IMG/VR virus record: IMGVR_UViG_3300037087_000760
Coordinates: 124,001 to 188,000 of that record
DNA: 64,000 nt
Reading direction: 5' to 3' (one strand)
Shown here: piece by piece, positions 21,995 through 51,120 of the stretch
Position numbering within the stretch: position 1 is the stretch's first letter
Layout of the letters: each line of letters opens with the position of its first letter
The notes under the pieces: model-generated
Database searches by the model: none
Seen by the model: the letters and a program-made list of their open reading frames with translations, nothing else
Told to the model about the DNA's origin: nothing
Translations under genes and position numbers: made by a program

Positions 21995-22078
21995 TGAAAC
22001 TATCCTCTTTTTGTTTATATATTATTTTTTTATTCCAGAAAAACTTCGTAATTTTGTTTAAAATTAAGTAGTATCCAT

Positions 22079-23851: not shown

Positions 23852-24120
23852 ATAAAAAAATTGAAATATTCGATGAACTTATTGAATTAACTCAAAATGA
23901 GATTGATAAAATTCAGAAAGATATATACAAAATAGAAGATAAGAATCTTTCAAAAAAATCCAAAAGATATTTTATATCCAATTTAGAAAAGCAAATTAAA
24001 AAATTGGAGAGAAATATAAAGAACATCGAAGAAATAAAAAAGGACTTAAAAGATTATTATAAACTGAAAAAGAAAAACAAAAAGAATATTTAATTATATA
24101 ATCTAAAAAGAAACTCTGAT

Positions 24121-30408: not shown

Positions 30409-30492
30409 GGCTGGGTGGCGGAACTGGTAGACGCGCGGGACTTAAAATCCCGTTCCTGTATGGGAGTGTGGGTTCAATTCCCATCCCGGCTA
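30409..30492 (+). tRNA. tRNA-Leu(TAA), long variable arm
   Basis: Full cloverleaf, loop CT-TAA-AA. Confidence 0.93.
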
Positions 30493-30493
30493 C

Positions 30494-30604
30494 AATCTCT
30501 GACATGGCACCCACTCTAAGGGACCAATACGAAAAGTTTGGGAGCTATCTGGAACAAGGCCGGAAGGCAGAAGGGATGGTAGTGGGGAGCCTAAATCAGA
30601 GATT
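30494..30604 (+). ncRNA. Structured ~111-nt RNA with SRP helix-8-like GCC-GGAA-GGC hairpin
   Basis: 9-bp terminal stem AATCTCTGA/TCAGAGATT; CCCACT/AGTGGG; GCTATC/GATGGT; CAAG-GCC-GGAA-GGC-AGAA. Confidence 0.4.
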
Positions 30605-30669
30605 TTTTAAATATTTTTATCAAATAATTTTTTTTATTCAGAAATTTGACATAATTTTGTAGTCCCTTG

Positions 30670-31072
30670 TTTGATAAAGAGTGTGAGTCAAAGGAAACAA
30701 TAAAGATTTTTAAGTCTTGAGTTCCGGCTGTAAAGGTAGCATACTCTTGTTCTTTGATTTAATGATGAAAAAGTTAGTTCTCGAAGATTAACGGCACCAG
30801 AAAGGTGTACGACACTCGTTGAGAGTGTACGATACTAAGAGGTGTATCAGAATCTTTGAAACGGGTATAAACCCGTTTGGGGAGGCGAGCAGCCGAACCA
30901 AATACAAACTCATATAACTCCGGCCCGCAAGTCGGATGAAAATTGAGTATTCAGTTTTGCGGAACTGTTGGGATAGCTAACATAAATTTATTTGTTGTGG
31001 TGATAAGTCCAAATCGATATGATTTAGTTCAGGAAGTATCGGACTAATTTGGTGAAAAACAAACACAACAAC
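30670..31072 (+). ncRNA. Candidate large ornate ncRNA
   Basis: No ORF of 60 aa or more, GC-elevated, dense hairpins (AAACGGGT/ACCCGTTT, ACACTC/GAGTGT, TGTTGTG/CACAACA), crossing helices at the 5' end. Confidence 0.5.
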
Positions 31073-31074
31073 AC

Positions 31075-31136
31075 GGACAGGTAGCTTAAGAGAGAGCCGT
31101 ATCAACGAGACGGTGGTTTAAACCCACCTCTGTCCA
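31075..31136 (+). ncRNA. 62-nt tRNA-like element lacking a normal anticodon arm
   Basis: Acceptor GGACAGG/TCTGTCC+A, D stem GCT/AGC, T arm GGTGG-TTTAAAC-CCACC; only 14 nt between D and T arms. Confidence 0.6.
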
Positions 31137-31309
31137 CAATATAAAGGGTGCAAAACTTGTTTTAACAATGTTTTTCGGGACGGTTTAGTTAAATCGGTTA
31201 TTCTTAACCAGCCCTTCTTAGAAAATTAGAAGAATCTGATACCCGATGGTGTATAGGATACCCGAAGTACAAGGGATGATCGGTGGCAACACAATCAACT
31301 TCTTTTAAC

Positions 31310-31441
31310 GAGTGTATTAGTGTAACGAAAGCACAGGCTGTTTGATGTTAGAGTAAGTTTTAGACGGCGGTCTTGGTCATTAGATTGACAAAACTGAAAT
31401 ATCGTAGGTCGGATGAGGGTTCAAATCCCTCATACATTCCA
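31310..31441 (+). ncRNA. ~130-nt tRNA-like element with expanded anticodon and variable regions
   Basis: GAGTGTAT/ATACATTC acceptor, D stem GTG/CAC, T arm GAGGG-TTCAAAT-CCCTC, GCTGTTT/AGACGGC stem closing an oversized loop. Confidence 0.55.
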
Positions 31442-31713
31442 AAAGGTGATGTGATGGAATAGTTTTTTCCATCCTGTTTTAAGGAGAGAACATTTGAGGA
31501 TAAAGCGAGCCTACATCACAAACAGGATCACCAAATAAGGTGAGGGAAACAAAGTAGAGTACCTTTTCTTCGGATTGAGGCCTTCGGGCCGAGGGAAATG
31601 ACCTGTTCTCCCTCAACTTTTTTAAAAAACGAAATTAAATTAAACTTTTTGAAAAAAAAGTTCTAAAATAGAAAAAAGAGACTTTATAAGTTAAATATAT
31701 AATAAAAAAACAT

Positions 31714-31784
31714 ATCCAGTAGGAACGTAAGTTCCGTTTTGGGACGCTCAGCGACCCAGAGGGGAAAACTCCCCGCAACTGGAT
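31714..31784 (+). promoter_or_regulatory. Four-way-junction RNA at the 5' end of the rplL-tRNA transcript
   Basis: ATCCAGT/ACTGGAT enclosing GGAAC-GTAA-GTTCC, TGGG..CCCA and GGGG..CCCC hairpins. Confidence 0.5.
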
Positions 31785-31888
31785 AAACTTTTTGAAATGA
31801 TTATGACACAGAACATCCAAAATATGATTATTAATCAGATACCCGGTAAAAATACCGATTGGATGAACTTTGTCTATAACGAATATAG

Positions 31889-31921
31889 AAAAAACCCAAT
31901 CGGAAACGATTGGGTTTTTTT
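31889..31921 (+). terminator. Intrinsic terminator of the attenuator
   Basis: ACCCAATCG-GAAA-CGATTGGGT followed by a T-run. Confidence 0.9.
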
Positions 31922-31952
31922 GTTTTATATGTCCACCATAGTTTTTAACTGG

Positions 31953-31965
31953 TGTTCTTTGAAAT
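31953..31965 (+). promoter_or_regulatory. boxA-like antitermination site
   Basis: TGTTCTTTGAAAT; copies at 32414-32426 (+) and 45905-45917 (-). Confidence 0.6.
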
Positions 31966-32044
31966 AATGATAAATCATATTCGGATTATAAGTTCAAAAC
32001 TGATAATCTGAACATAAAATGTAAATAAAAATAAATTAGAAACT

Positions 32045-32422
32045 ATGGAAGATTTAAAAAAATTAGCGGATGATCTGAGTAATCTCACCGTATTAGAGTG
32101 TTACCAGTTAGCTAAGATAATGAAAGAAGAATACGGAATAGAATCAAATACAAAAATTGTTGGTGTGAATGTATCACCAGTTCCAACTAAGGTAGTTGAA
32201 ATTGAAAAAACAAGTTTTGATGTGATTCTAAAATCAGCAGGAACAACCAACAAACTTGGTGTTATCAAATCCATCAAAGAAATGACAGGACAAAGTTTAT
32301 TGGAAATTAAGAATCTCGTTGATAATGCACCAGCGAAACTAAAAGAAAATGTAAGTAAAGATGAAGCTATGTCTTTACTGAATATTCTGAAAGAATTAGG
32401 TGCAGAAATTGAAGTTCTTTGA
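32045..32422 (+). CDS. rplL: Ribosomal protein bL12 (L7/L12)
   Basis: LSNLTVLE, EKTSFDVILK, KLGVIKSIKEMTG, LVDNAP, LKELGAEIEV. Confidence 0.93.
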   Translation: MEDLKKLADDLSNLTVLECYQLAKIMKEEYGIESNTKIVGVNVSPVPTKVVEIEKTSFDVILKSAGTTNKLGVIKSIKEMTGQSLLEIKNLVDNAPAKLKENVSKDEAMSLLNILKELGAEIEVL

Positions 32423-32449
32423 AAATAATAAAAAATGTAGTAGCGAGTT

Positions 32450-32546
32450 TGAGTGTTACTTCGTAGCTCAACAGTCGAGCATCAATCAGTTAAATTGAAA
32501 GTTGTGGGTGCGATTCCCACCGAACCCGAAAGGGTAATATCACTCA
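32450..32546 (+). ncRNA. tRNA-Asn(GTT)-like RNA with a hairpin inserted in the acceptor stem
   Basis: D arm GCTC/GAGC, loop CA-GTT-AA, T arm GTGGG/CCCAC; acceptor TTCG/CGAA interrupted by CCC-GAAA-GGG then TGAGTG/CACTCA. Confidence 0.65.
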
Positions 32547-32571
32547 ATGATTATCTCTACATTTTTTTAAT

Positions 32572-32649
32572 GGGTGTGTAGCTCAGTAGCGTTAGAGCGC
32601 GACACTGATAATGTCGAGGTCGTAGGTTCAAGTCCTACCATACCCACCA
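32572..32649 (+). tRNA. tRNA-Ile(GAT)
   Basis: Canonical cloverleaf with encoded CCA. Confidence 0.96.
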
Positions 32650-32659
32650 AAAATAACAC

Positions 32660-32741
32660 TGTGTCGTACGCAGCCGATCCTGATAAGATCGAGAACTTGT
32701 AACTGGTGTTGAAAATGTGGGTTCGAATCCCACCGGCACAA
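32660..32741 (+). tRNA. D-armless tRNA-Ile(GAT) with 25-nt variable region
   Basis: TGTGTCG/CGGCACA+A; CGATC-CTGATAA-GATCG; canonical T arm; only 8 nt between acceptor and anticodon stems. Confidence 0.65.
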
Positions 32742-32750
32742 CAAAAATTT

Positions 32751-32822
32751 GGGTTGGTAGTACTAATGAAAAACGGCGGCCTGTTAAGCCGCGAGATGTG
32801 GGTTCAAGTCCCACCCGGCCCT
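32751..32822 (+). tRNA. tRNA-Asn(GTT), weak D arm, U73
   Basis: GCGGC-CTGTTAA-GCCGC; T arm GTGGG-TTCAAGT-CCCAC. Confidence 0.8.
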
Positions 32823-32831
32823 CAATATTAT

Positions 32832-32905
32832 TCCTCAGTAGCTCAGCTGGTTAGAGCATTTGACTGTTAATCAAAGGGTCACAGGTCCAAATCCTGTCTG
32901 GGGAG
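32832..32905 (+). tRNA. tRNA-Asn(GTT)
   Basis: Canonical TCCTCAG/CTGGGGA+G; T loop variant TCCAAAT. Confidence 0.93.
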
Positions 32906-32995: not shown

Positions 32996-33087
32996 GGGAG
33001 TGTAGCTGATTTGGTTTAGCGGCAGACCGTTAATCTGTGACTGAAAATATTGAAATAAAGTTGGTTCGACCCCATCCTCTCCCGCCA
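32996..33087 (+). tRNA. tRNA-Asn(GTT) with 21-nt AT-rich variable region
   Basis: GCAGA-CCGTTAA-TCTGT; G73 plus CCA encoded; C33. Confidence 0.7.
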
Positions 33088-33418: not shown

Positions 33419-33504
33419 ATCAATGTGAACGGAATGGTTATCGTAGAGGTCTCATAAGCCTTTCAACTCGTTGAGTTGTGGTGGTTCGAATCCACTCATT
33501 GATA
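33419..33504 (+). tRNA. tRNA(CAT), Met or Ile2, with long variable arm
   Basis: GAGGT-CTCATAA-GCCTT; variable hairpin TCAAC/GTTGA. Confidence 0.75.
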
Positions 33505-33510
33505 CAAAAT

Positions 33511-33665: not shown

Positions 33666-33737
33666 GGTTCTGTGGTGTAATGCGTAGCACGAGTGATTCT
33701 GAATCACTTGGTTAAGGTTCGAATCCTTACAGAACTA
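33666..33737 (+). tRNA. tRNA-Gln(CTG), A73
   Basis: AGTGA-TTCTGAA-TCACT; full cloverleaf. Confidence 0.85.
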
Positions 33738-33738
33738 C

Positions 33739-34837: not shown

Positions 34838-35830
34838 TCAGGTGGTAATTGGTTGTTTATTACTATATTCATTTTTTAAAATATTCATCATATCTATATG
34901 ATTATGAACAGTTTTTATCTGATAAATATGGTCTAATCCGTATTCCTTTATTATATTATCTATTCTTTCCTTTTCCATTCCATGCGAACTATAATCACTT
35001 ACTCTTCTTCCACCTTCTTCTTTAAAATATAAAATACTTCCCTTTGGGATCTTGAATGATTTATCATTAACAGCCCATTCTCCCTCAGTTTCGAATGTTA
35101 CACTATTTATTTCAAAGGCTTTTGAAAAAAGTTTCCTCAGTTCAGGAAATTCTAATTTGTCTTTTATGTAATCTTCAATTGGTTTCCAATTTTTCCAAGG
35201 ATAATCCTTTGTCATTGGATAATCAACAACATATTCTTTTAGCATTTCCAAAATTATCTTGACAAAATCATCAAGATTATTTATATGTAATTGACCTAAA
35301 TGATAAAGATCATCTATTTTTTCCGACAAAGTATAATGAATATCCTGAATATAATTAATTATACCGTTTTTATCATGATAAGTATCAAATTTAAGTCCAC
35401 CATCTCTTTTTTTCTTAATATTTCTATAAGCTAAATTTTGAAACAATTTATCTAATGCCCCAGTGAAGGTTATATCTCTTTTACGGCCATTTTTATATTC
35501 GATAAATTGTGGATCATTCATTACTAATCTTCTCCAGTACTTAAAATTTTGTTTACAAAAGAAATCTGGATTGAAGTATTCTATGGGTTCTAAGTTTTTA
35601 TTCAATTTCAAGACTTCAGAACCATTCATTATGACAAGCAACTCTCTGATGTCAAACCAGTGTTTTGCTATCCCATAATGGTCTGAAATTCCCTTTAAAT
35701 TCAAAAATTCCATCCTCATTAAAGAATCCCACACTTTATCATCTCCAACTCTTAAAACTAAATAGAACCAATTAGGTTCATTCTTGGGAATCCATTTCTT
35801 TTCGAATATTTGAAAATCAGTAATCATCAA
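34838..35830 (-). CDS. Hypothetical protein with capsid-targeting-like N-terminus
   Basis: MMITDFQIFE; AATATATA box at 35833-35840. Confidence 0.5.
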   Translation of the reverse strand: MMITDFQIFEKKWIPKNEPNWFYLVLRVGDDKVWDSLMRMEFLNLKGISDHYGIAKHWFDIRELLVIMNGSEVLKLNKNLEPIEYFNPDFFCKQNFKYWRRLVMNDPQFIEYKNGRKRDITFTGALDKLFQNLAYRNIKKKRDGGLKFDTYHDKNGIINYIQDIHYTLSEKIDDLYHLGQLHINNLDDFVKIILEMLKEYVVDYPMTKDYPWKNWKPIEDYIKDKLEFPELRKLFSKAFEINSVTFETEGEWAVNDKSFKIPKGSILYFKEEGGRRVSDYSSHGMEKERIDNIIKEYGLDHIYQIKTVHNHIDMMNILKNEYSNKQPITT

Positions 35831-35859
35831 TGTATATATTATTTTTTATGGGCACAAAA

Positions 35860-35879
35860 AAACCGTGAATTCACGGTTT
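35860..35879 (-). terminator. Intrinsic terminator
   Basis: AAACCGTG-AATT-CACGGTTT with U-run on the minus strand. Confidence 0.65.
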
Positions 35880-37236
35880 AATGTTATATTATATTAGAAG
35901 TTAAAAGTTAATACCAGTATAATCAATAAGATCTTTCATATGTTCATTCTTATGTCCTTCGGCGTGTTCCATAGCTTCAAAGATATCTGTCTTACTTCTT
36001 TCAGTTTTGAATCCATTTGTAATTATATCAACATATTTAGGATCTGTCCAACTTTTAAATCCAGTTCCATTGATTGCATATGGGTTGAATCCCCAATGAG
36101 CTTTACACTCAACACCATCTTCAATTGTTGGTTGAAAAAAATCCAAAGATCCATAATTTCCAACAAAAAATCTTTTCTTTGTTAGTTTATCTTCAAACAT
36201 CAATCTATATACATTCTTTAAGTCTATCCAATAATATCCGTAGCAAATTCTATATCCGTATTTTTGGGTTTCGCTGAATTTATTTGGATTGAATGAAACA
36301 TTTATCTTTTTTGGATTTTTTGCTTCTATTACTTTATAGTAATTGTCGAATGTAATTCCAATCTCATGAAATTGACCATCTATTAATCCTGCATAAGATC
36401 TCCAACCCAGACCAAAAGCACAATCATACCAATCCCATTCACGGGCAGGGATATTCTCTTTATAAAGTGGTTGAACGACTAACTTTCCTTTACGGATAGT
36501 CAGTCTTTCAATCGGATTTATTGTTTTCATTTTCTGACGGCTAAAAGAATGATACCGAAAATAATTATAATTACTGCAAAAGGAATCCACAATGGAGAAG
36601 TAACCCACCACCATGACCATGTTATAGCACCTGTTAATTTAAGAATTAGGAATACGATGAACAATACTGTTCCGAAACTCATTCCACCACTTGCTGTTGA
36701 ATTTTTTGACATAATATTAATTTTTAATTGTTATTACTTAATAATTGTTGATAATAATTATATTTGTATTTATCATAGTTATCTTTTGTCATAAAAAGTA
36801 GATATATTGTTCCTTTATTAATATTTTTGATTAACCAACGATATACAAATGTATTTCCTTTTGGTTCTTTCCATATATTATTTTTCTTGTCAAAATTATC
36901 AGCATCCGTAGAATTAATAAAGGCTCTTAGATATTTATTGTCGTAATCTTCAATATAAAGTTTGAAAAGGTCAGTATTATACTCCATCATAATTATATAG
37001 AAGTAACAAAAATCACTCTTAGTAAAATAATATAAATTTGTACTCGATTGAAATTTAATCACTATGGAATAATAACCACTATCTATTTTTTCGGGTTTAC
37101 TAATAGAAATAGAAATTGGTTTCAATTGTTTCAGAATGTTTTTTTTGGTTTCACCTATAAATGATTGTGAAAATACGAAATTGAACATTACAATACCAAC
37201 GAGTGTTAAAAATAGTTTTTTCATTATCATTTGATT

Positions 37237-38103
37237 TTAGATTCCTAATAAATGTTTTGCTAGTGAAACCTCTGGGATATGTTGAAAATAGTACATTACT
37301 CCGAATAAAGATAGAGCCAATGAAAAGAAGAAAAACAAAGCCCATCCAATTTGTTTGTGGGTCATACTTTGATAATTATGTAATTTTTTCCATTCGAACC
37401 AAATTTCGATAACTCCCAGAATCATAAGTAAAGCAAATAATCCTATTTTTAACCAGAAAAACAGAACAGTTGAAGCTAATAGTCCAAATGATAAAATTCC
37501 CAATCCCAACCAAGATTTTAATGAGAAACCAATTGATTTAAATATTCTTCCACCATCCAATGGACTTATTGGTAAAAGGTTGAATAAATTTACAAAGGCC
37601 ATCCATCCGGCTATCGCCGCGAATAATGGATTCAGAGTAATAAAATATACTATTCCAGTAATAATAGTTAGGGCAAATCCCCAAACTGGTCCCATTATAG
37701 CAACAACGAATTCCGTATTTCTTGATTTGAAATCATTCTCAATAACAGCGGCACCACCAATGAATGGTATAAAATAAATGCCCTTAACTTTTAATCCATG
37801 TCTTTTGGCAGCCCATATATGACCAGATTCATGAACAAATAAACAAACCATGATAGCTATGGCGAATGTCCAAGTAGTGAGAAATGCATAACTCACAACA
37901 CTTCCAACGGCCAAACCTATTTTTACCACCTTTGCCCCTTTTAATAATTTTGTTACAACTGGAATGGCTTTAGATCCAATTTTTCCAAGAGCCACAAAAA
38001 ATCCTACAAAGATATTTTTCTTCTTCGGTTTTTCTTCAATCTTTGGTTGATAATTATAAGATGCTTTTACAAAAATTTTTTCTGGTTTTTCTCCAATCAT
38101 CAT
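37237..38103 (-). CDS. Site-2 (M50) intramembrane metalloprotease
   Basis: HESGH, FIPFIGG, MGP, NLLPISPLDGGR. Confidence 0.92.
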   Translation of the reverse strand: MMIGEKPEKIFVKASYNYQPKIEEKPKKKNIFVGFFVALGKIGSKAIPVVTKLLKGAKVVKIGLAVGSVVSYAFLTTWTFAIAIMVCLFVHESGHIWAAKRHGLKVKGIYFIPFIGGAAVIENDFKSRNTEFVVAIMGPVWGFALTIITGIVYFITLNPLFAAIAGWMAFVNLFNLLPISPLDGGRIFKSIGFSLKSWLGLGILSFGLLASTVLFFWLKIGLFALLMILGVIEIWFEWKKLHNYQSMTHKQIGWALFFFFSLALSLFGVMYYFQHIPEVSLAKHLLGI

Positions 38104-38714
38104 AATGTAACTTTTTTGAGGTTATAAATTTTTATCCAGTTTATAAATCCATAAATTGCCGTTCCTGTAAAAATCAATGATTCTATAGCGACAAGGTATA
38201 TTCCACTAAATCCAAACAAAAAAACACAAACTATATCACTTATTATCCAGACTAACCAAGATTCAATGTATTTAAAGGATAGTAGGTTGACACCAAGGAT
38301 ACTGAGAACTGTTACTGTGATGTCTAAGAATAGGTTTGCTGACTGTTTTTCTACTGGAAGTATCTGTCGAACTATGAAATCAATAACAAAAATGGAAATT
38401 ATAGTAATTATACTCCAAATTAGACGCTGTTTATTCGTCAACCATCTTAATCCCTTACCTTCGTTTTTATCTGTTTTTCTCCAATAAAATATGGCAACAA
38501 TACAGATGTAAGTAAAGTAAATTTGTAGAATGGCATTAGCGTAAAGTGAATTATTCCAGAAAAGAAAGAAGAAACACACTTGACCGATAATACTACAAAT
38601 CCAATTCCACCAATTAGCTTTTGTGGCAAATATAACGGAAACAAAATTGAAAATCGATCCGATCAATTCCAAGTAAGTTAAATGATAACCATATATTGTT
38701 AAGGCTGTTTCCAT
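38100..38714 (-). CDS. pnuC: Nicotinamide riboside transporter PnuC
   Basis: Multi-pass membrane protein; LYANAILQ, KYIESWLVWIISD, YGFINW. Confidence 0.88.
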   Translation of the reverse strand: METALTIYGYHLTYLELIGSIFNFVSVIFATKANWWNWICSIIGQVCFFFLFWNNSLYANAILQIYFTYICIVAIFYWRKTDKNEGKGLRWLTNKQRLIWSIITIISIFVIDFIVRQILPVEKQSANLFLDITVTVLSILGVNLLSFKYIESWLVWIISDIVCVFLFGFSGIYLVAIESLIFTGTAIYGFINWIKIYNLKKVTL

Positions 38715-41818: not shown

Positions 41819-42808
41819 ATGACTAACAAAAAAGATAAAAAAATAGGACTTGTATTTGGAAAGTTCATGCCCCTTCATAATGGACACATGGCCTTGATTC
41901 GATTTGCACAATCTCAGTGTGATAAACTATATGTATTGTTATGTGAGGCTAATGATGAACCAATATGTGGAAAAATTCGATTAGGATGGTTATTGGACAC
42001 ATTCAAAGATGATTTGAACATAGAAGTGAGAATTACTGATGTTCAATTACCATTAGTTCCCTATTCATCTAAATTAATAGCTAAAATGTGGGCCAAATTT
42101 TTCAAGGAAGAATTTCCTGATGTGAATATTCTATTTACTTCGGAAAGATATGGTGATTTCACAGCAGAATTCATGGGTATAAAACATATACTTTTTGATA
42201 ATGACAGAGAAGAAGTTTTTGTATCAGCCACCAAGATTCGTAATCATCCACTCATTTATTGGGATTATATTCCCGACATTGTAAAACCGTACTTTGTTAA
42301 GAAAATTTGTATTTGTGGAACAGAATCAACGGGAAAAAGTATATTAACCGAAAAACTTGCTAAGAGATTTCATACTAACTTTGTTCCAGAATGGGGTAGA
42401 ACTTTATGTCCGTCTACAACTGAATGTACCATAGATATAATTAAACAAATCGGTAAATCCCACGCTACTGACATTCACAATAAAATACAATTCTCACATA
42501 AATTTTTATTTTCAGATACCGACCTGAATACAACAAAAATGTATTCCTATTTCTTATTCAATGAAATACCGAAATTTGATGATTGGATTGAACAAGAAAA
42601 TAAGTTCGATTTGTACATTTTTCTTGAAAACGATGCCCCTTTTATTCAGGATGGAACACGACTGACAAAAGAAAGAAGGGATGAACTACGAGATTACCAT
42701 TACGACTACCTTATATCTCAAGGATGTAAAGTTGAAATTGTAACTGGTAGTGATTGGGAAATCAGGTATGAAAAAGCTGTCAGAATAATTGAGGAAAATT
42801 TCGGATAA
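41819..42808 (+). CDS. nadR: NadR-type NMN adenylyltransferase / ribosylnicotinamide kinase
   Basis: GKFMPLHNGH, FTSERYG, VSATKIR, GTESTGKS, EWGR, DTD, QDGTR. Confidence 0.92.
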   Translation: MTNKKDKKIGLVFGKFMPLHNGHMALIRFAQSQCDKLYVLLCEANDEPICGKIRLGWLLDTFKDDLNIEVRITDVQLPLVPYSSKLIAKMWAKFFKEEFPDVNILFTSERYGDFTAEFMGIKHILFDNDREEVFVSATKIRNHPLIYWDYIPDIVKPYFVKKICICGTESTGKSILTEKLAKRFHTNFVPEWGRTLCPSTTECTIDIIKQIGKSHATDIHNKIQFSHKFLFSDTDLNTTKMYSYFLFNEIPKFDDWIEQENKFDLYIFLENDAPFIQDGTRLTKERRDELRDYHYDYLISQGCKVEIVTGSDWEIRYEKAVRIIEENFG

Positions 42809-42813
42809 GAATC

Positions 42814-43104
42814 ATGAGAAATTACAAATTAGAAAAATTACAAGCCGGAGAAAGTTTCGTTACCAGTGAAAAAGGTAATTCCATGTCACCAATTATTAAG
42901 TCGGGACAAAAACATAAACTTGTTCCCGCCACTTGGAGAGATGTAGATGTAGATGATATAGTCTATTGTAAAGTCAAAGGAAACTTCTACACTCACCTTG
43001 TAAAAGCAAAAAATGAAGATAAGGGTTGCTTAATAGGTAACAACAAAGGTGGAGTTAACGGATGGACTAAACAAGTCTATGGTAAGGTTGTAAAAATCCT
43101 TTAA
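42814..43104 (+). CDS. S24/S26 peptidase-like small protein
   Basis: KGNSMSPII.SG. Confidence 0.5.
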   Translation: MRNYKLEKLQAGESFVTSEKGNSMSPIIKSGQKHKLVPATWRDVDVDDIVYCKVKGNFYTHLVKAKNEDKGCLIGNNKGGVNGWTKQVYGKVVKIL

Positions 43105-44360
43105 ATATAAATATTCAGAATTTCATTCAGTTTAATTTTGGTTTCCTCATTCAGTGATTTCCCCTTATTTTCATTATACAGAATCATAAAGGAACTTACC
43201 ACTTTATTGAATTTGAAACTATCCGTATAACCAAATACAGTTTCCTTAAACTTTTCAATATCAACAGTTTCCTTACCAGTTCTTGACATCCATTCATCCC
43301 ATTTTTTGAAGAATCTGATGATACCATTGATGTTCTGGTCTGACCATTGACCACCATCGAAATAATGTCCGATGAACATCAGATAAAACCTCAGAACCTT
43401 TGGATCATAGTTATCTGGATTAACAATATTTCCTTTACTTTTGGCCATCTTGATTCCATTATTCAGAATCATTCCCTGATGCACCACTTTTTTAAAAGGT
43501 TCTTCCTCACTGATCATCCCAATATCATACAGGAACATATTAATAAAACGAGCATATATCAGGTGCATGCAAGCGTGTTCACTTCCCCCGATGTACAGAT
43601 CAACTTGTTTATATTTATCTTTACTACACAGTTCATTTTCGTTGTACGAATCACAATAACGGATAAAATAGAAACTACTATCTACGAAAGTATCCAGAGT
43701 ATCAGTCTCACCTTCAATTGGAATAGGACATCCCCAACTTCTTTGTCTACTGACACACCAATCATGTTGATTCTCCAGCCAATCTCTTTGAGAATTGATT
43801 GTTTTCTTTGGGTAATCAATCCAATCCAGATTTTTTATCAGTCGGTCTTTATATTCGGTGATTTTAAAATACCATTGTTCCATTTGACGAATTTCAATGG
43901 TCGTATTACATCTATCACATTTACCATCTTTGACCTGTTCACGAGCCAGAACAGTTCCACAACTTGGACACCAATTTACTTCACCCCAAGCTTTGTAAGC
44001 CAGTCCATGTTCTTTCAGTTTGATAAATATCCATTGTGTCCACTTCTGGTAAGATGGATCTGAAGTAATTACTTTTTCTTCAAAAGAAGTGTCCATTCTT
44101 TCCATCTGTTTACGGAAATTCTCAATGTTTTCATAGGTAACTTCTCTGGGATCTCTATTGACTGATTTGGCGTAATTTTCAGCTGGAAGTCCAAAGGAAT
44201 CATACCCAAACGGTTGAAAAACTTTAACTCCTTTATATCTTTGGTATCGACAATAACTGTCTACGATAGCGTAATTATAATAATGTCCGATGTGCAGTCC
44301 GTTTCCGCTCGGATAAGGAAACATGACAACCACCATTTTTTCATTTTTTATGTCGTTCAT
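43101..44360 (-). CDS. leuS: Minimal leucyl-tRNA synthetase (no CP1 editing domain, no C-terminal domain)
   Basis: MFPYPSG, HIGH, DSFGLPAEN, CPSC/CDRC, DWCVSRQRSWG, ETDTLDTF, GGSEHA, KMAKSKGN. Confidence 0.92.
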   Translation of the reverse strand: MNDIKNEKMVVVMFPYPSGNGLHIGHYYNYAIVDSYCRYQRYKGVKVFQPFGYDSFGLPAENYAKSVNRDPREVTYENIENFRKQMERMDTSFEEKVITSDPSYQKWTQWIFIKLKEHGLAYKAWGEVNWCPSCGTVLAREQVKDGKCDRCNTTIEIRQMEQWYFKITEYKDRLIKNLDWIDYPKKTINSQRDWLENQHDWCVSRQRSWGCPIPIEGETDTLDTFVDSSFYFIRYCDSYNENELCSKDKYKQVDLYIGGSEHACMHLIYARFINMFLYDIGMISEEEPFKKVVHQGMILNNGIKMAKSKGNIVNPDNYDPKVLRFYLMFIGHYFDGGQWSDQNINGIIRFFKKWDEWMSRTGKETVDIEKFKETVFGYTDSFKFNKVVSSFMILYNENKGKSLNEETKIKLNEILNIYI

Positions 44361-45120
44361 TGTCTTTTAATTTGTTTGAGAAATGTTCAATTGAGATATT
44401 ATGTTTTTTGATTGTTTTATAAATAAGACTTCTATTACTTTCGTTATATTCCATATTTAAATTTTTCATAATATCTCTATAAGATTTTGATTTAGAAATA
44501 ATCCCTTTAAAAAGATTAATATCATAATCGAAATAATCATAATTTCTTTTATTTGTGAAATCTTTCCAATCATCTTTTTCAATTATTTCCTTATCTTCGT
44601 ATCTAAAATAACACCCACCAGCCGTCCCTTTCAATTGACAACTAAATTTAATTTGTTGTCTAAAAATACCTGTTTCTCTTTCAGCTCCTCGAAGGCTAAT
44701 GAATTTTTTTAAAGGAGTAAAATTTTTATCATACATTATAATTGATTTCTTATTTGGATTGGATATTTTCATTAGTTTTTTACTTTTATCAGAATGTTTT
44801 TTTCCTGTCCAATCTACACCATCTCCACCATCTGTACTATTCTTCAATCTAAATCCCCAGCATTTAAATTGAGAAATCCAATATCTTTCTAATGAATCAA
44901 TATTATTTTTATCACCGATATCAAGTATTTCTATTATTGGTGAAAGATTTTTATTTTTGAGATATTTTAACCATTTATTTTTTCTTGTCCAAGGTTCTTG
45001 ACGGATACTCCAATTTGACATATGTCCCCTCAATCTTTTTTCTAAATTTTTGGTCTTACCTACATATTTTATAATTTTATCTTCTGGGTCTGTTAATGTA
45101 TAAATATAAAATTCCATCAT
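44341..45120 (-). mobile_element. Free-standing GIY-YIG homing endonuclease with NUMOD-type DNA-binding motifs
   Basis: YIYTL...YVGKT...R...H, LERYWI, NSTDGGDG, GKKHSDKSK, FISLRGAERETG. Confidence 0.88.
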
Positions 45121-45169
45121 AGATTTTTATTTCTATATATAAAAATTTATGTGTAATGTTTCATAGTTG

Positions 45170-45243
45170 TAACCCCACCCGGACTTGAACCGAGATATTT
45201 AGTTTCTAAAACTAACGCCGCTAACCAATTAGGCCATGGGGTC
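45170..45243 (-). tRNA. tRNA-Leu(TAG) with short variable loop
   Basis: TTAGT-TTTAGAA-ACTAA; 4-nt variable loop; A73. Confidence 0.8.
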
Positions 45244-45253
45244 ATTATTTTAG

Positions 45254-45327
45254 TAGTTCTGTTCGGACTTGAACCGAAATATTTGGTTTTTGAAACCAAC
45301 GCCGCTAACCAATTAGGCCACAGAACC
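45254..45327 (-). tRNA. tRNA-Leu(CAA) with short variable loop
   Basis: TTGGT-TTCAAAA-ACCAA; near-copy of the neighbouring D arm; A73. Confidence 0.8.
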
Positions 45328-45332
45328 TTTTG

Positions 45333-45417
45333 TATCGATGGTGGGACTCGAACCCACACCCTCGTAATGAGGAACGGCTTCTGAGGCCGTCGCGTCTACC
45401 AATTCCGCCACACCGAC
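45333..45417 (-). tRNA. tRNA-Leu(CAG), long arm
   Basis: Canonical Leu D arm GCG-GAATTGGTAGA-CGC; CT-CAG-AA. Confidence 0.94.
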
Positions 45418-45469
45418 AAATTTCAAATATTTACCAGTTTTTTGAAAAACTGTTCAAAATTTGATTTTG

Positions 45470-45543
45470 TAGCACCTGTCGGATTCGAACCGACAAACTT
45501 GGATTTTAAGACCAATATGGTTGCTCTATTACATCAAGGTGCC
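45470..45543 (-). tRNA. tRNA-Leu(TAA) with short variable loop
   Basis: TTGGT-CTTAAAA-TCCAA; A73. Confidence 0.75.
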
Positions 45544-45548
45544 ATTTG

Positions 45549-45632
45549 TAGCCTCTGTGGGAATCGAACCCACACGGTCTTTCGACCACTGGATTTTGAG
45601 TCCAGAGCGTCTACCAATTCCGCCAAGAGGCC
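45549..45632 (-). tRNA. tRNA-Leu(CAA), long arm
   Basis: Canonical cloverleaf, CT-CAA-AA. Confidence 0.95.
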
Positions 45633-45637
45633 ATTTG

Positions 45638-45722
45638 TGGGAGTTGATGGAGTTGCACCACCCGAGCCCTGAGGACAACAGATTTACAGTCTGCCCCGCT
45701 ACTACTTACGGAATAAACTCCC
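45638..45722 (-). tRNA. tRNA-Tyr(GTA), long arm
   Basis: GCAGA-CTGTAAA-TCTGT; atypical T loop TGCAACT. Confidence 0.88.
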
Positions 45723-45726
45723 AAAG

Positions 45727-45811
45727 TGACCAAGGTGGGATTCGAACCCACACGGGCGTAAAGCCCAACGGATTTTAAGTCCGTCGCGTCTACCAGTTCC
45801 GCCACAAGGCC
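45727..45811 (-). tRNA. tRNA-Leu(TAA), long arm
   Basis: CT-TAA-AA; two T-T mismatches in acceptor stem. Confidence 0.88.
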
Positions 45812-45819
45812 AATTTCAG

Positions 45820-45901
45820 TGTCCATAGGGGGACTCGAACCCCCACGCCTTTCGACAATAGTTTCTTAGGCTATCGCGTCTACCAGTTCCGCCATACGGA
45901 C
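45820..45901 (-). tRNA. tRNA-Leu(AAG), long arm
   Basis: ATAGC-CTAAGAA-ACTAT; canonical Leu D arm. Confidence 0.88.
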
Positions 45902-45918
45902 AATTTCAAAGAACTCAG

Positions 45919-45990
45919 TGGGAATAGAAGGATTCGAACCTACAAATCACGATTTTACAGACCGCTGAGCGACCACTGCTCAATATTCCC
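45919..45990 (-). tRNA. tRNA-Tyr(GTA) with short variable loop
   Basis: GGGAATA/TATTCCC+A; CT-GTA-AA; 5-nt variable loop. Confidence 0.85.
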
Positions 45991-50157: not shown

Positions 50158-51120
50158 TTATTTGATTTCTATTTTTATGTTTGGTATGAAAATATTTACT
50201 TTATCAAGATCATCTATTAAATCTTTCTTGTATAATTTAGGATACCAATTTGAATCATATTCGATACCAATTATATATTTATTAATACCTTTTATACAAT
50301 CAAAATTATTTGATGGATCATATTTCAAATTAAGTTCAGTATGAGAATTACATTCTACTCTTTCTTCAGCTTCGTGTTTAAAATATGGATCTTTATGATA
50401 TAAATGAGATCTAATTTTAAAATGATGGCTCATTCTATCACCATCGAATGTTATTTTAACTGGATGGTTATTATAATTTAGATTTTTATTTCTCGAAAAA
50501 GATATAAAATGAAATAAGGAAATCATTCTATCATCTTTTAAAATATTCTTCAAATTATCCAAAGTTGTCCAATGATATAAGAATCCAACCTGTTTTGACT
50601 CTTTTAATTCACAACCCCAATTATAATTTCTCTCCCTTTGATATTGTTTTATTATTTCAACTAAACTTGACCAAAAGACAACAGCTGTAGTTCCTACCCC
50701 TTCTTTAAATTTTATTGAATCGTATCCTTTCTTTTTAAGTTTGGGAACTATATGATATTCCCTATCCAATATTTCTAAAACTTTATATGGTGAAAAATAA
50801 TCATAACCATAGAATCTTTGTTTCCTCATAAGATCATTTAATTCTGTTTCGGGTATAGGTAACGATCTCAATAATTTTTCATAATTATCAATTCCTTGCT
50901 CTCCATAAGGTGTTAAATCCAATGTTTTTTCCAAGTGAAGTTTAACTACATAGATATATTTTCCATATCTTTTCGATTCCTTTTCCGTATCGGAGAAATA
51001 TATTCCCATTCTACTTTTTGTAGTATCTCGTCTGGTTTTAAATGATGTAATATCATCATTATAACTTCCATGATACCAAATTTCATTATCATTATTGAAT
51101 TTTTCAAAAGTGGTTAACAT
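50158..51120 (-). CDS. Tandem ART-fold (ART-PolyVal-like) protein
   Basis: MLTTFEKF; WYHGS...GIYFSD...YDSI; second domain LYHWT...ISFSR...EAEE. Confidence 0.55.
   Translation of the reverse strand: MLTTFEKFNNDNEIWYHGSYNDDITSFKTRRDTTKSRMGIYFSDTEKESKRYGKYIYVVKLHLEKTLDLTPYGEQGIDNYEKLLRSLPIPETELNDLMRKQRFYGYDYFSPYKVLEILDREYHIVPKLKKKGYDSIKFKEGVGTTAVVFWSSLVEIIKQYQRERNYNWGCELKESKQVGFLYHWTTLDNLKNILKDDRMISLFHFISFSRNKNLNYNNHPVKITFDGDRMSHHFKIRSHLYHKDPYFKHEAEERVECNSHTELNLKYDPSNNFDCIKGINKYIIGIEYDSNWYPKLYKKDLIDDLDKVNIFIPNIKIEIK

What the first reader, a model, noticed from the sequence alone, without database searches (positions are those of the whole stretch)
45170..45543. Three Leu-anticodon tRNAs without the long variable arm: possible orthogonal pair with mini-LeuRS
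TAG, CAA and TAA anticodons occur in class I bodies (3-4 nt variable loop, A73), beside normal long-arm CAA and TAA copies. Bacterial tRNA-Leu is class II and is recognised partly through its tertiary shape by the LeuRS C-terminal domain, which the phage enzyme lacks. Inference: the short tRNAs are the dedicated substrates of the phage mini-LeuRS. Alternatively, they are charged with another amino acid and recode Leu codons.
Basis: partly seen in the sequence, partly recalled or inferred. Interest (0 to 1): 0.82.

Follow-up and report, generated by a model that had tools for sequence, protein, structure and literature searches.

The report
Arm-less leucine tRNAs beside phage mini-LeuRS
A huge peat-soil phage carries three real leucine tRNAs that lack the usual long extra arm, next to a stripped-down leucyl-tRNA synthetase; they look like ordinary leucine acceptors, not a private or recoding pair, but the synthetase gene uses essentially one leucine codon, and related phage synthetases contain none of their own amino acid.

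Summary
Three 74-75-nt tRNAs on the minus strand (45169-45243 UAG, 45253-45327 CAA, 45469-45543 UAA) have 4-nt variable loops and A73. They sit among long-arm tRNA-Leu genes, upstream of a GIY-YIG endonuclease and a 419-aa LeuRS that lacks the CP1, leucine-specific and C-terminal domains.

They are best read as leucine acceptors. All 31 arm-less Leu tRNAs I first collected keep A14 and the A15:U48 pair; 30 of 31 keep A73. The full Leu signature is met by 20/31 short and 31/32 long Leu tRNAs, against 2/154 other class I tRNAs. Stems covary strongly.

The "dedicated orthogonal pair" reading is only partly supported. In favour: conserved synteny, and short Leu tRNAs near the enzyme in 8 of 9 LeuRS-bearing genomes. 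Against: the same tRNA design occurs in cultured phages with no LeuRS and in mycobacterial chromosomes, and long-arm copies share the arrays. Recoding is not supported.

Unexpected: the LeuRS gene encodes 19 of its 20 leucines with CTG, a codon that makes up 6% of window Leu codons. Most orthologues use TTG alone, and a sister subfamily has no leucine at all. IleRS, AsnRS and ValRS of related phages likewise lack their cognate amino acid. No charging or expression data exist.

The parts
45169..45243 (-). Arm-less (class I body) tRNA-Leu, anticodon UAG. G1.U72, A73, A14, A15:U48, D-arm GCC-U-AAUUGGUUAG-C-GGC, variable loop AUAU. It is the last tRNA before the GIY-YIG and LeuRS genes.
   Evidence: ARAGORN; Rfam 56.3 bits; cloverleaf; all 20 stem pairs standard. 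A short UAG tRNA holds the same position in L001, L112 and L113.
45253..45327 (-). Arm-less tRNA-Leu, anticodon CAA. It is a paralogue of 45169-45243, with an identical D-arm and variable loop. Its acceptor stem GGUUCUG/CAGAACU is identical to that of tRNA-Gln(CUG) at 33666-33738.
   Evidence: ARAGORN; Rfam 58.8 bits (0.92 core identity to 45169).
45469..45543 (-). Arm-less tRNA-Leu, anticodon UAA, the most divergent of the three. Its D-loop AAUAGAGCAAC has no G18G19, and pair 31:39 is a mismatch. It keeps A73, A14, A15:U48 and G1.U72.
   Evidence: ARAGORN; Rfam 51.7 bits.
45332..45417 (-). Normal long-arm tRNA-Leu(CAG). It is the only C34 decoder of CUG in the window, and CUG is the codon the LeuRS gene uses for 19 of its 20 leucines.
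45548..45632 (-). Normal long-arm tRNA-Leu(CAA).
45639..45722 (-). Degenerate long-arm tRNA-like element with a GUA (Tyr) anticodon and an aberrant T-loop. It lies where the relative L045 has a normal 83-nt tRNA-Tyr.
   Evidence: Not called by ARAGORN or the tRNA model. tRNA-Sec model 28.6 bits, E 9e-4, below gathering score. Synteny with L045:701-783.
45726..45811 (-). Normal long-arm tRNA-Leu(UAA).
45819..45901 (-). Long-arm tRNA-Leu with the unusual anticodon AAG.
   Evidence: AAG copies also occur in L007, L027, L037, L044, L045 and L113.
45918..45990 (-). 73-nt tRNA-Tyr(GUA) with a short variable loop (class I body), although bacterial tRNA-Tyr is normally long-armed. It is the first gene of the array.
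   Evidence: An orthologue is at L045:322-394.
44341..45120 (-). GIY-YIG homing-endonuclease gene inserted between the tRNA array and the LeuRS gene.
   Evidence: Pfam PF01541 and TIGR01453. The same insertion is in LR756501 (L001 6012-6782). It is absent in L112 and L113, where the LeuRS gene starts 10-22 nt after the tRNA.
43101..44360 (-). Mini-LeuRS, 419 aa: catalytic Rossmann core with HIGH and a KMAKS version of KMSKS, the ZN1 cysteine cluster and a short helical C-terminal bundle. It has no CP1 editing domain, leucine-specific domain or C-terminal tRNA-binding domain. It has 20 Leu codons: CTG 19, CTT 1.
   Evidence: domain map against T. thermophilus LeuRS; best 120 homologues 404-515 aa, 69-100% identical, on contigs up to 780 kb; codon bias; model and 3ZIU match.
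30409..30493 (+). Second long-arm tRNA-Leu(UAA), at the head of the other tRNA array.

Best explanation
The three short genes are genuine leucine-accepting tRNAs: tRNA-Leu isoacceptors whose long variable arm has been reduced to a 4-nt loop. They belong to a widespread but little-noticed design, found in many phage tRNA arrays and in actinobacterial chromosomes. This design keeps the anticodon-independent leucine identity set of bacterial tRNA-Leu: A73, A14, the A15:U48 Levitt pair, a 3-bp D-stem with 13:22 unpaired, and the Leu-type D-loop register.

In this phage they are probably transcribed with the long-arm copies as one minus-strand array that may continue into the GIY-YIG and LeuRS genes. 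They would then be processed and given CCA after transcription, because CCA is not encoded. Charged with leucine, they decode UUA, UUG and CUA/CUG. UUA, UUG and CUA together make up 66% of the Leu codons of this 30% G+C genome.

Together with the mini-LeuRS they form a phage-owned leucine-decoding module. The most likely reading is that the mini-LeuRS charges both long and short forms, mainly through the acceptor end and A73, and that a normal bacterial LeuRS can also charge at least the two short forms with an intact G18G19 elbow.

What is shown: the genes, their structure, the conservation of the identity nucleotides, the synteny and the codon usage. What is inferred: co-transcription, leucylation, and which enzyme does it.
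For: Structure. Two detectors agree. Across 31 unique arm-less Leu tRNAs, 97.7% of stem positions pair and 19/20 stem pairs have compensatory changes.

Identity. A14, A15 and U48 are present in 31/31 short Leu tRNAs and A73 in 30/31, as in 32/32 long Leu tRNAs. Other class I tRNAs of the same loci have A15:U48 in 62/154. The joint Leu signature is met by 20/31 short, 31/32 long and 2/154 other class I tRNAs (Fisher 5e-17). U8, A14, A15, the A after G18G19 and U48 are invariant in alignment A1. These are the elements that define leucine identity for E. coli LeuRS, which does not need the arm (PMC9976931; A. aeolicus arm deletion mainly lowers affinity, PMC2377443).

Origin. Some short copies are plainly long-arm Leu tRNAs minus the arm (L011:3419, L027:7949, L007:8800; 0.84-0.86 core identity to long Leu). 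An 81-nt intermediate exists (L027:8263).

Precedent with a normal LeuRS. S. coelicolor class I tRNA-Leu(CAA) is charged by its single LeuRS (PMC6614811). Mycobacterial chromosomes carry a single-copy tRNA-Leu(UAA) with the same GCCU-AAUUGG D-arm. Cultured phages without a LeuRS hit carry the design.

Demand. TTA is 42%, TTG 18% and CTA 6% of Leu codons.

Codon equivalence. CTG columns of the window LeuRS are Leu (TTA, TTG or CTN) in 82% of orthologue cells.
Against: No aminoacylation or expression data exist. No RNA run was listed as holding the stretch, and laying reads gave only fragments of other organisms' tRNAs.

The window's three tRNAs are the less canonical members of the class. Two have one extra D-loop nucleotide, and 45469 has no G18G19, so none passes the strict joint signature.

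The D-arm of the 45169/45253 type is also close to generic class I arms. Relatives in L027 are 0.89 identical in core to a tRNA-Phe, so an origin by anticodon change from another class I tRNA cannot be excluded.

E. coli LeuRS fails on S. coelicolor class I tRNA-Leu, so host charging is not guaranteed.
Confidence: 0.6

Rival explanations
1. The arm-less tRNAs are the dedicated substrates of the mini-LeuRS. The host LeuRS, which uses its C-terminal domain on the tRNA elbow and arm, charges them poorly or not at all, while the truncated phage enzyme charges them well. The pair would be at least one-way orthogonal.
For: A short tRNA-Leu(UAG) is the immediate upstream neighbour of the LeuRS gene in the window, L001, L112 and L113, across enzyme subfamilies only 38% identical. 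Eight of nine LeuRS-bearing genomes have short Leu tRNAs near the gene. The LeuRS-less huge phage LR756511 has an all-long Leu array. Short Leu tRNAs without G18G19, and so presumably without the elbow that the C-terminal domain binds, occur only in LeuRS-bearing genomes (5/20 vs 0/18, p=0.048). E. coli LeuRS cannot charge a natural class I tRNA-Leu. The LeuRS gene avoids all codons read by the short tRNAs' cognate anticodons (TTA, TTG, CTA = 0 of 20). A sister subfamily has no leucine at all, as expected if the enzyme must be made before its own products exist.
Against: Long-arm Leu tRNAs are in the same arrays and are the nearest neighbour in L007, L023 and L027. Most LeuRS loci have no Leu tRNA within 10 kb. 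The arm-less design exists without any LeuRS in cultured phages and in Mycobacterium. Arm-less E. coli tRNA-Leu variants are charged by E. coli LeuRS. The mini enzyme lacks the modules that could sense the arm. In LR745206 the enzyme's single codon, TTG, is read by a short CAA tRNA, so codon avoidance does not track the short forms. The sample of genomes is small, is not corrected for relatedness, and is limited to 10-kb flanks.
Confidence: 0.22
2. The arm was lost to escape attack rather than to fit an enzyme. On this reading the short forms are leucine tRNAs made structurally unlike host tRNA-Leu, so that a tRNA-targeting nuclease or modifying toxin fails to recognise them. The attacker could be a host defence or the phage's own host shut-off. 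This concerns why the arm is lost and is compatible with the best explanation.
For: The design recurs in unrelated phages of Acinetobacter, Aeromonas, Gordonia and Bacteroidota-type huge phages, which suggests a general advantage for phages. Phage Leu tRNAs are strongly enriched in G1.U72 (47/76 vs 31/205 other tRNAs, 7e-14), another departure from the G1-C72 I recall for E. coli tRNA-Leu; no host tRNAs were examined here. The cognate-free synthetases point to infections in which particular aminoacyl-tRNAs become unavailable. Al-Shayeb et al. note genes for repair of tRNAs cleaved by host defences in huge phages (PMC7162821).
Against: No Leu-specific tRNA nuclease or repair gene was identified in the window. 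The phage keeps long-arm copies with the same anticodons. Cellular Actinobacteria use the same design with no obvious conflict.
Confidence: 0.12
3. Recoding. The short tRNAs are charged with another amino acid and make UUA, UUG and CUA ambiguous or reassigned.
For: Class I body with a Leu anticodon. One acceptor stem is identical to that of a tRNA-Gln. The core of related copies resembles tRNA-Phe. The LeuRS gene avoids TTA, TTG and CTA completely.
Against: None has G3:U70 (Ala) or a long arm with G73 (Ser). Their A35 departs from the U35 that, on established identity rules, GlnRS and LysRS need, and position 34 is U or C where PheRS needs G34 (sequence). The leucine set is invariant. Long-arm tRNAs with the same anticodons UAA and CAA coexist, so every UUA and UUG, 60% of Leu codons, would be ambiguous. 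TTA and TTG occupy the same conserved Leu columns in orthologues as CTG does in the window.
Confidence: 0.03
4. Decaying duplicates. The short genes are tRNA pseudogenes produced by array turnover and have no function.
For: Array turnover is evident: a degenerate tRNA-Tyr-like remnant lies at 45639-45722. 45469 lacks G18G19 and has a mismatch at 31:39. L007:8800 has U73 and an acceptor mismatch.
Against: The cloverleaves are intact with compensatory changes. Orthologous short genes are kept at about 73% DNA identity in LR756501 and in syntenic position across deep divergence. In this window UAG exists only as a short gene.
Confidence: 0.03

Closest known systems
Type I (short variable loop) tRNA-Leu(CAA) of Streptomyces coelicolor, and the chromosomal short-loop tRNA-Leu(UAA) of Mycobacterium and other Actinomycetota
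   Same: A bacterial-type tRNA-Leu with a short variable loop coexists with long-arm isoacceptors in one compartment. A73 and A14 are present. The mycobacterial gene shares the GCCU-AAUUGG D-arm of window 45169 and 45253. The S. coelicolor tRNA is leucylated experimentally (PMC6614811).
   Different: The cellular examples have one normal full-length LeuRS and a loop of 5-7 nt. Here the loop is 4 nt, there are three such tRNAs, G1.U72 is present, one lacks G18G19, and the adjacent enzyme lacks the CP1, leucine-specific and C-terminal domains. S. coelicolor tRNA-Leu(CAA) has C48 rather than the U48 kept here.
Arm-less or short-arm tRNA-Leu genes annotated in cultured phages (Acinetobacter phage Acibel004, Aeromonas phage Akh-2, Gordonia phage Fryberger; shortened arm in Salmonella phage S114 and Vibrio phage Hades)
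   Same: Same design: Leu anticodons UAG, UAA or CAA; a 4-6-nt loop ending in U48; a Leu-type D-loop; A73; frequent G1.U72; location in phage tRNA arrays.
   Different: Those genomes gave no LeuRS hit, and all their short Leu tRNAs keep G18G19. I found no study of their charging. One is annotated as a pseudogene in the record.
Animal mitochondrial tRNA-Leu with mitochondrial LeuRS
   Same: A class I tRNA-Leu recognised through A73 and A14 without a long arm (PMC9976931). Human mitochondrial LeuRS also charges S. coelicolor class I tRNA-Leu.
   Different: The mitochondrial enzyme is full length. Mitochondrial tRNAs have relaxed cores, whereas two of the three here have canonical D/T loops.
Mycoplasma mobile LeuRS (naturally CP1-less; PDB 3ZIU) and the viral mini-AlaRS of a giant virus
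   Same: These are natural synthetases that have lost the editing module. 3ZIU is the best structural match to the mini-LeuRS (TM 0.86, 32% identity). M. mobile also replaces the leucine-specific domain with a tetrapeptide (PMC3643597 abstract). The mini-AlaRS (PMC10036535 abstract) is a viral precedent for a truncated synthetase.
   Different: The M. mobile chain in 3ZIU is 637 aa against 419 aa here, and the model covers only about 0.6 of it. I expect that enzyme to keep its anticodon-binding and C-terminal domains, but I did not check this. The phage enzyme ends after a short helical bundle. Its Leu-codon monopoly has no counterpart that I could find.

Membership tests
tRNA (Rfam RF00005) | Covariance-model score at or above the gathering score of 29 bits | tested here: met
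   56.3, 58.8 and 51.7 bits, full model 1-71.
tRNA (Rfam RF00005) | Cloverleaf kept by compensatory change in relatives | tested here: met
   31 unique short Leu tRNAs: 606/620 stem cells paired, and 19/20 pairs show double-sided changes.
Class I (type I) tRNA-Leu | Leu anticodon with a variable region of 4-7 nt and no extra stem | tested here: met
   UAG, CAA and UAA with loops AUAU, AUAU and GUUU.
Class I (type I) tRNA-Leu | Accepts leucine from a LeuRS | not testable with these tools
   Needs aminoacylation assays or charged-tRNA sequencing. No RNA run holding the stretch was listed.
Bacterial tRNA-Leu identity set (E. coli / A. aeolicus rules) | Discriminator A73 | tested here: met
   All three have it; 30/31 of the class.
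Bacterial tRNA-Leu identity set (E. coli / A. aeolicus rules) | A14 and the A15:U48 Levitt pair | tested here: met
   All three have it; 31/31 of the class against 62/154 other class I tRNAs.
Bacterial tRNA-Leu identity set (E. coli / A. aeolicus rules) | G18G19 in the Leu register (3 nt after A14, 3 nt before position 22) with A20a | tested here: inconclusive
   45169 and 45253 have AAUUGG and the A, but with one extra U after G19. 45469 has no GG at all.
Bacterial tRNA-Leu identity set (E. coli / A. aeolicus rules) | Long variable arm (class II body) | tested here: not met
   The loops are 4 nt. The arm is reported as not required for leucylation by E. coli LeuRS.
Orthogonal synthetase/tRNA pair | The tRNA design occurs only together with the dedicated enzyme | tested here: not met
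   Arm-less Leu tRNAs occur in Acibel004, Akh-2 and Fryberger with no LeuRS hit at E<=1e-10, and in Mycobacterium chromosomes.
Orthogonal synthetase/tRNA pair | Host enzyme does not charge the tRNA; the dedicated enzyme does | not testable with these tools
   Requires a cross-charging matrix.
Orthogonal synthetase/tRNA pair | Genetic linkage of enzyme and tRNA | tested here: met
   A short tRNA-Leu(UAG) directly precedes the LeuRS gene in four genomes, but long-arm Leu tRNAs are linked as well.
Bacterial leucyl-tRNA synthetase (TIGR00396) | Class I catalytic core with HIGH and KMSKS, and a LeuRS-specific sequence match and fold | tested here: met
   HIGH at residues 23-26 and KMAKS at about 304-308. 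LeuRS is the best family (E 9e-114) and the best PDB sequence hits (1e-83). The model matches 3ZIU with TM 0.86.
Bacterial leucyl-tRNA synthetase (TIGR00396) | Full-length architecture (CP1 editing, leucine-specific and C-terminal tRNA-binding domains); score above the curated cut-off | tested here: not met
   381 bits against a cut-off of 548. T. thermophilus residues 228-417, 437-486, 579-637 and the C-terminus have no counterpart.
Identity-mismatched (recoding) tRNA | Determinants of a different synthetase (G3:U70 for Ala; long arm with G73 for Ser) | tested here: not met
   Pairs 3:70 are C-G, U-A and C-G. The discriminator is A73 and there is no arm.

The most novel reading that the evidence does not exclude
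The Leu array and mini-LeuRS are one module of a self-starting, phage-owned translation subsystem. On this reading, huge-phage synthetases are built so that they can be translated when their own aminoacyl-tRNA is missing. Some have no cognate residue at all: LeuRS subfamily 2, and the IleRS, AsnRS and ValRS of related phages. The window's LeuRS has about 20 irreplaceable leucines, all but one on a single codon read by a C34 tRNA. The arm-less, and in some cases elbow-less, tRNA-Leu species would be bodies adapted to a synthetase that has lost every domain touching the elbow and arm, which would make them the preferred substrates of the phage enzyme once host leucine charging fails or is shut off.
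Probability: 0.3. Interest if true: 0.9.

Novelty: new variant of a known kind. Interest (0 to 1): 0.62.

Why it matters
Bacterial tRNA-Leu is a textbook long-arm (class II) tRNA, as the LeuRS papers read here also state. This locus, with the relatives collected here, shows that phages repeatedly shed the arm while keeping the exact nucleotides that define leucine identity. That is a natural experiment on what LeuRS really reads.

Placed next to a LeuRS reduced to its catalytic core, the tRNAs give a compact and directly testable system: five transcripts and two enzymes. It addresses how little of a class Ia synthetase is needed for specific charging, and whether phages build private charging systems.

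The codon finding raises the stakes. The synthetase gene is the only gene in 64 kb with a one-codon leucine usage. Related phage synthetases have purged their cognate amino acid altogether. This points to infections in which specific aminoacyl-tRNAs become limiting. It also offers a simple sequence signature, a synthetase without its own amino acid, for finding such systems.

Tried and rejected
1. Opposite-strand reading. The reverse complements of the three anticodons are CUA, UUG and UUA, a suggestive suppressor/Gln set. I rejected it because the GGUUCRANUCC T-loops exist only on the minus strand, and neither ARAGORN nor Rfam, even in E-value mode, calls a tRNA on the plus strand.

2. Origin from tRNA-Gln. 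The acceptor stem of 45253 equals that of Gln(CUG) at 33666, but the D-arm, Levitt pair and loop register are of the Leu type. G1.U72 and A73 are common in this phage's tRNAs. The identical stem remains unexplained.

3. Origin from tRNA-Phe by a change at position 34. Core identity is up to 0.89 for L027 copies. I could not exclude it for the GCCY-type D-arm. However, the D-loop has the Leu geometry (3-bp stem and 11-12-nt loop), and the same arm is found in mycobacterial tRNA-Leu(UAA).

4. Expression evidence. Two run searches and one read-laying run found the phage DNA in 13 peat metagenome runs holding at least two-thirds of the sampled words (three more hold 5-13%), but no RNA run holding the stretch. 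The fragments laid came from other organisms' tRNAs.

5. Promoter and terminator scan. Promoter-like sites were not above shuffled expectation, and no minus-strand terminator lies between the array and the LeuRS gene. Bacteroidota-type promoters are not covered, so this is uninformative.

6. MAFFT alignment A1 misplaces the 3' anticodon-stem strand of 4-nt-loop members. I therefore counted pairs from ARAGORN-parsed arms instead.

I dropped that row and did not resend it.

8. Literature. Eight full-text searches, six of them aimed at these two questions, found no paper on phage arm-less tRNA-Leu or on synthetases lacking their cognate amino acid. Absence from this library is not proof of novelty.
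Full report
**What is there**

The window is a 30% G+C piece of a 211-kb IMG/VR contig (L004). The phage is present in 13 peat metagenome runs that hold at least two-thirds of the sampled words. Its closest database relatives are the 595-735-kb uncultured huge phage genomes of the INPHARED collection. Al-Shayeb et al. report that their genomes above 634 kb all fall in the Mahaphage clade, with Bacteroidetes as predicted hosts (PMC7162821). A TonB-dependent receptor in the window and a T9SS sorting domain in a relative fit a Bacteroidota host.

On the minus strand, from 45990 down to 45169, lies a tRNA array:
- short tRNA-Tyr(GUA), 73 nt
- long-arm Leu(AAG)
- long-arm Leu(UAA)
- a degenerate Tyr-like remnant
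- long-arm Leu(CAA)
- short Leu(UAA)
- long-arm Leu(CAG)
- short Leu(CAA)
- short Leu(UAG)

The array is followed by a GIY-YIG endonuclease gene (45120-44341) and a 419-aa LeuRS gene (44360-43101).

**Checking the observation**

The three short genes score 51.7-58.8 bits on the Rfam tRNA model, against a threshold of 29. They fold into complete cloverleaves with 4-nt variable loops, A73 and C74, and no encoded CCA. Only the coordinates need a note: the stated interval also holds the long-arm CAG gene.

The enzyme is a LeuRS core. It has HIGH and KMAKS motifs and a ZN1 cysteine cluster. It lacks the CP1 editing domain, the leucine-specific domain and the C-terminal tRNA-binding domain. Its AlphaFold model (pLDDT 85.6) superposes best on the naturally CP1-less Mycoplasma mobile LeuRS (3ZIU, TM 0.86), and covers about 0.42 of full-length enzymes. 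The family is large and tightly conserved. The 120 best database matches are 404-515 aa long and 69-100% identical, and many sit on contigs of 400-780 kb.

**Are the short tRNAs leucine tRNAs?**

I collected tRNAs from 33 LeuRS-bearing IMG/VR loci, from three huge-phage records, from loci found with a D-arm plus anticodon-loop pattern, and from cultured phages. That first set held 31 unique arm-less Leu tRNAs. Two further loci, L112 and L113, later added seven more.

Across the 31, 97.7% of stem positions pair and 19 of 20 stem pairs show compensatory changes. All 31 have A14, A15 and a variable loop ending in U, which gives the A15:U48 pair. Thirty of 31 have A73, and 27 of 31 have an unpaired 13:22. 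This matches the 32 long-arm Leu tRNAs of the same loci. Among 154 other class I tRNAs, A15:U48 occurs in 62 and an unpaired 13:22 in 31.

The joint signature, which adds the Leu-type D-loop register, is met by 20/31 short, 31/32 long and 2/154 other tRNAs (Fisher 5e-17). These are the elements that define leucine identity for E. coli LeuRS. For that enzyme the long arm and the anticodon are dispensable (PMC9976931). For A. aeolicus LeuRS, arm deletion mainly lowers affinity (PMC2377443).

Some short copies are visibly long-arm Leu tRNAs with the arm removed, and an 81-nt intermediate exists.

The window's three are at the divergent end of the class. 45169 and 45253 carry one extra nucleotide after G19. 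45469 has no G18G19 at all. None has the Ala or Ser determinants I checked.

**Is the pair dedicated?**

Evidence for a link is real.
- A short tRNA-Leu(UAG) is the last gene before the LeuRS gene in the window and in LR756501. In both, the same GIY-YIG gene lies between them.
- In L112 and L113 the LeuRS start codon lies only 10-22 nt after that tRNA. The two enzyme subfamilies are only 38% identical.
- Eight of nine LeuRS-bearing genomes with tRNA data have short Leu tRNAs nearby. The LeuRS-less huge phage LR756511 has an all-long array.
- Short tRNAs without G18G19 occur only in LeuRS-bearing genomes (5/20 vs 0/18, p=0.048).
- E. coli LeuRS cannot charge the natural class I tRNA-Leu of S. 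coelicolor.

Exclusivity, however, fails.
- Long-arm Leu tRNAs share the arrays and are the nearest neighbour of the gene in L007, L023 and L027.
- The arm-less design is present in cultured phages that gave no LeuRS hit at E<=1e-10: Acinetobacter phage Acibel004, Aeromonas phage Akh-2 and Gordonia phage Fryberger.
- It is also present as a single-copy chromosomal tRNA-Leu(UAA), with the same GCCU-AAUUGG D-arm, in many Mycobacterium and other actinobacterial genomes. The only direct evidence for charging by a normal LeuRS is from S. coelicolor (PMC6614811).
- An enzyme stripped of the elbow- and arm-contacting domains has no obvious means of preferring an arm-less body.

I therefore rate the dedicated-pair model at about 0.2. 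The plain reading, that the tRNAs are leucine isoacceptors usable by either enzyme, I rate at about 0.6.

**Recoding**

Recoding is unlikely. The leucine set is intact. Long and short copies share the anticodons UAA and CAA. TTA and TTG codons in orthologous LeuRS genes occupy the same conserved leucine columns as CTG does in the window.

**An unexpected property of the enzyme gene**

The window uses TTA for 42%, CTT for 22%, TTG for 18% and CTG for 6% of leucine codons. The LeuRS gene encodes its 20 leucines with CTG 19 times and CTT once. All its other amino acids use the usual AT-rich codons (GC3 0.33).

TTA and TTG are frequent in the two other reading frames of the gene (13-15 and 10-14 times) but absent in frame. 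The bias therefore acts on decoding. The gene is the single extreme outlier among all ORFs of the window (G=99.7; the next highest value for another gene is 17).

Most orthologues show the same monopoly with TTG, for example 20/20, 18/18, 19/19 and 26/26. In those genomes TTG is 4-29% and TTA 28-67% of background Leu codons. The 20 leucines sit at positions that are nearly invariant in the subfamily.

The sister subfamily (LR756501, L112, L113; 508-519 aa) contains no leucine at all, against about 40 expected. Ile, Met and Phe stand at the corresponding columns.

**The same property in other phage synthetases**

I scanned all 309 ORFs of at least 250 aa in the phage loci for depletion of common residues. 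Every zero-count case was a synthetase lacking its own amino acid:
- IleRS of LR745206: 735 aa, 0 Ile against 57 expected.
- AsnRS: 392 aa, 0 Asn.
- A weak ArgRS-like protein: 392 aa, 0 Arg.
- A CP1-less ValRS: 442 aa, 0 Val.
- GluRS is strongly depleted: 6 Glu against 34 expected.

I found no description of this in the searchable literature.

The simplest reading is that these enzymes are selected to be translatable when their own aminoacyl-tRNA is scarce or absent. In other words, the phage charging system must be able to start itself. This supports the general idea that phage synthetases and phage tRNAs work as a unit (already suggested in general terms by Al-Shayeb et al.). It does not single out the short tRNAs. 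In the window the chosen codon, CUG, is read by the long-arm tRNA(CAG). In LR745206 the chosen TTG is read by a short tRNA(CAA).

**Mechanism proposed**

Shown:
- Gene structures, conservation of the identity nucleotides, synteny, codon demand, and the domain content and codon monopoly of the enzyme.

Inferred:
- The array, the endonuclease gene and the LeuRS gene form one transcription unit. No minus-strand terminator was detected, but the scan is weak.
- The tRNAs are cut out and receive CCA.
- They are leucylated through A73 and the D-loop/Levitt core by the mini-LeuRS, and probably by the host enzyme.
- They read UUA, UUG and CUA/CUG.

Why the arm was lost is open. Candidates are fit to an enzyme with no arm or elbow contacts, escape from tRNA-targeting attack, or neutral streamlining. 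The strong enrichment of G1.U72 in phage Leu tRNAs of both body types (47/76 vs 31/205) is a further unexplained departure from the G1-C72 I recall for E. coli tRNA-Leu.

**Novelty and limits**

Class I tRNA-Leu is known from mitochondria and S. coelicolor, and such genes are annotated in phage records. The tRNAs are therefore a new variant of a known kind. Their coupling to a core-only LeuRS with a one-codon or zero-leucine design appears new.

All functional statements rest on sequence. No charging, expression or host data exist. The co-occurrence counts come from 10-kb flanks of related genomes and are not phylogenetically corrected.

Noticed in passing
window 43101-44360 (-); orthologues in L005-L036: The mini-LeuRS gene encodes its 20 leucines with CTG 19 times and CTT once, although CTG is 6% and TTA 42% of window Leu codons. 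TTA and TTG are common out of frame but absent in frame. It is the only such gene in the window (G=99.7). Most orthologues use TTG alone (e.g. 20/20, 26/26)..
   Followed up: partly
L001:4489-6015 (-), L112:4001-5560 (+), L113:4001-5536 (+): A second mini-LeuRS subfamily (38% identical to the window enzyme, 508-519 aa) contains no leucine at all, against about 40 expected (Poisson 1e-18). Ile, Met and Phe stand at the columns that are leucine in the window subfamily..
   Followed up: partly
L053 (LR745206): 22048-24255, 30523-31701, 31721-32899, 35799-37277 (+); L009:4590-5918 (+): Other huge-phage synthetases lack their own amino acid: IleRS with 0 Ile (57 expected), AsnRS with 0 Asn, an ArgRS-like protein with 0 Arg, a CP1-less ValRS with 0 Val, and GluRS with 6 Glu (34 expected). 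In a scan of 309 ORFs, every zero-count hit was a synthetase missing its cognate residue. I found no literature on this..
   Followed up: partly
window 45918-45990 (-) and 45639-45722 (-): A 73-nt tRNA-Tyr(GUA) has a short variable loop, although bacterial tRNA-Tyr is normally long-armed. A degenerate long-arm Tyr-like remnant lies where relative L045 has a normal 83-nt tRNA-Tyr. Arm loss may therefore be happening for Tyr as well..
   Followed up: partly
window 33419-33505 (+), 32996-33087 (+); L053:47962-48043; L007, L008, L010, L027, L031: The reverse swap also occurs. Long-arm bodies of 82-92 nt carry anticodons of normally class I families: Met CAU 87 nt and Asn GUU 92 nt in the window; Gln UUG 82 nt with U1-A72 and G73, and Thr, His, Arg, Cys and Ile copies in relatives. 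tRNA body plans seem unusually fluid in these phages..
   Followed up: no
all phage Leu tRNAs collected (window, L001-L053, L112, L113): G1.U72 instead of G1-C72 is found in 47 of 76 phage Leu tRNAs of both body types, against 31 of 205 other tRNAs (Fisher 7e-14). This includes cultured phages of Acinetobacter, Aeromonas, Salmonella, Gordonia and Vibrio. The reason is unknown..
   Followed up: partly
window 45253-45327 (-) and 33666-33738 (+): The short tRNA-Leu(CAA) and a tRNA-Gln(CUG) in the other array have identical acceptor stems (GGUUCUG/CAGAACU) and A73..
   Followed up: no
window 44341-45120 (-); L001:6012-6782 (-): A GIY-YIG homing-endonuclease gene sits between the last tRNA and the LeuRS gene in both the window and LR756501. 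The endonuclease-plus-tRNA stretch is about 73% identical in DNA, while the adjacent LeuRS genes are only 38% identical in protein. L112 and L113 lack the insertion. This looks like mosaic exchange at the junction..
   Followed up: no
window 45819-45901 (-): A tRNA-Leu has anticodon AAG. My recollection, not checked here, is that A34 is unusual in bacteria outside tRNA-Arg(ACG). Similar copies occur in L007, L027, L037, L044, L045 and L113..
   Followed up: no
window 11396-12616, 22079-23851, 38100-38714, 41819-42808, 32045-32422, 50158-51120: The window carries a set of NAD salvage genes: NAPRTase, a glutamine-dependent NAD synthase, a PnuC-type NMN transporter and a NadR-like protein. It also carries a ribosomal protein L7/L12 gene inside the tRNA region and an ADP-ribosyltransferase domain protein..
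   Followed up: no
window, 46 long ORFs: Stop codon use is TAA 31, TGA 14 and TAG 1. A relative (L005:3537-3609) carries a tRNA with a CUA anticodon. Coding density under the standard code is normal in this window..
   Followed up: no
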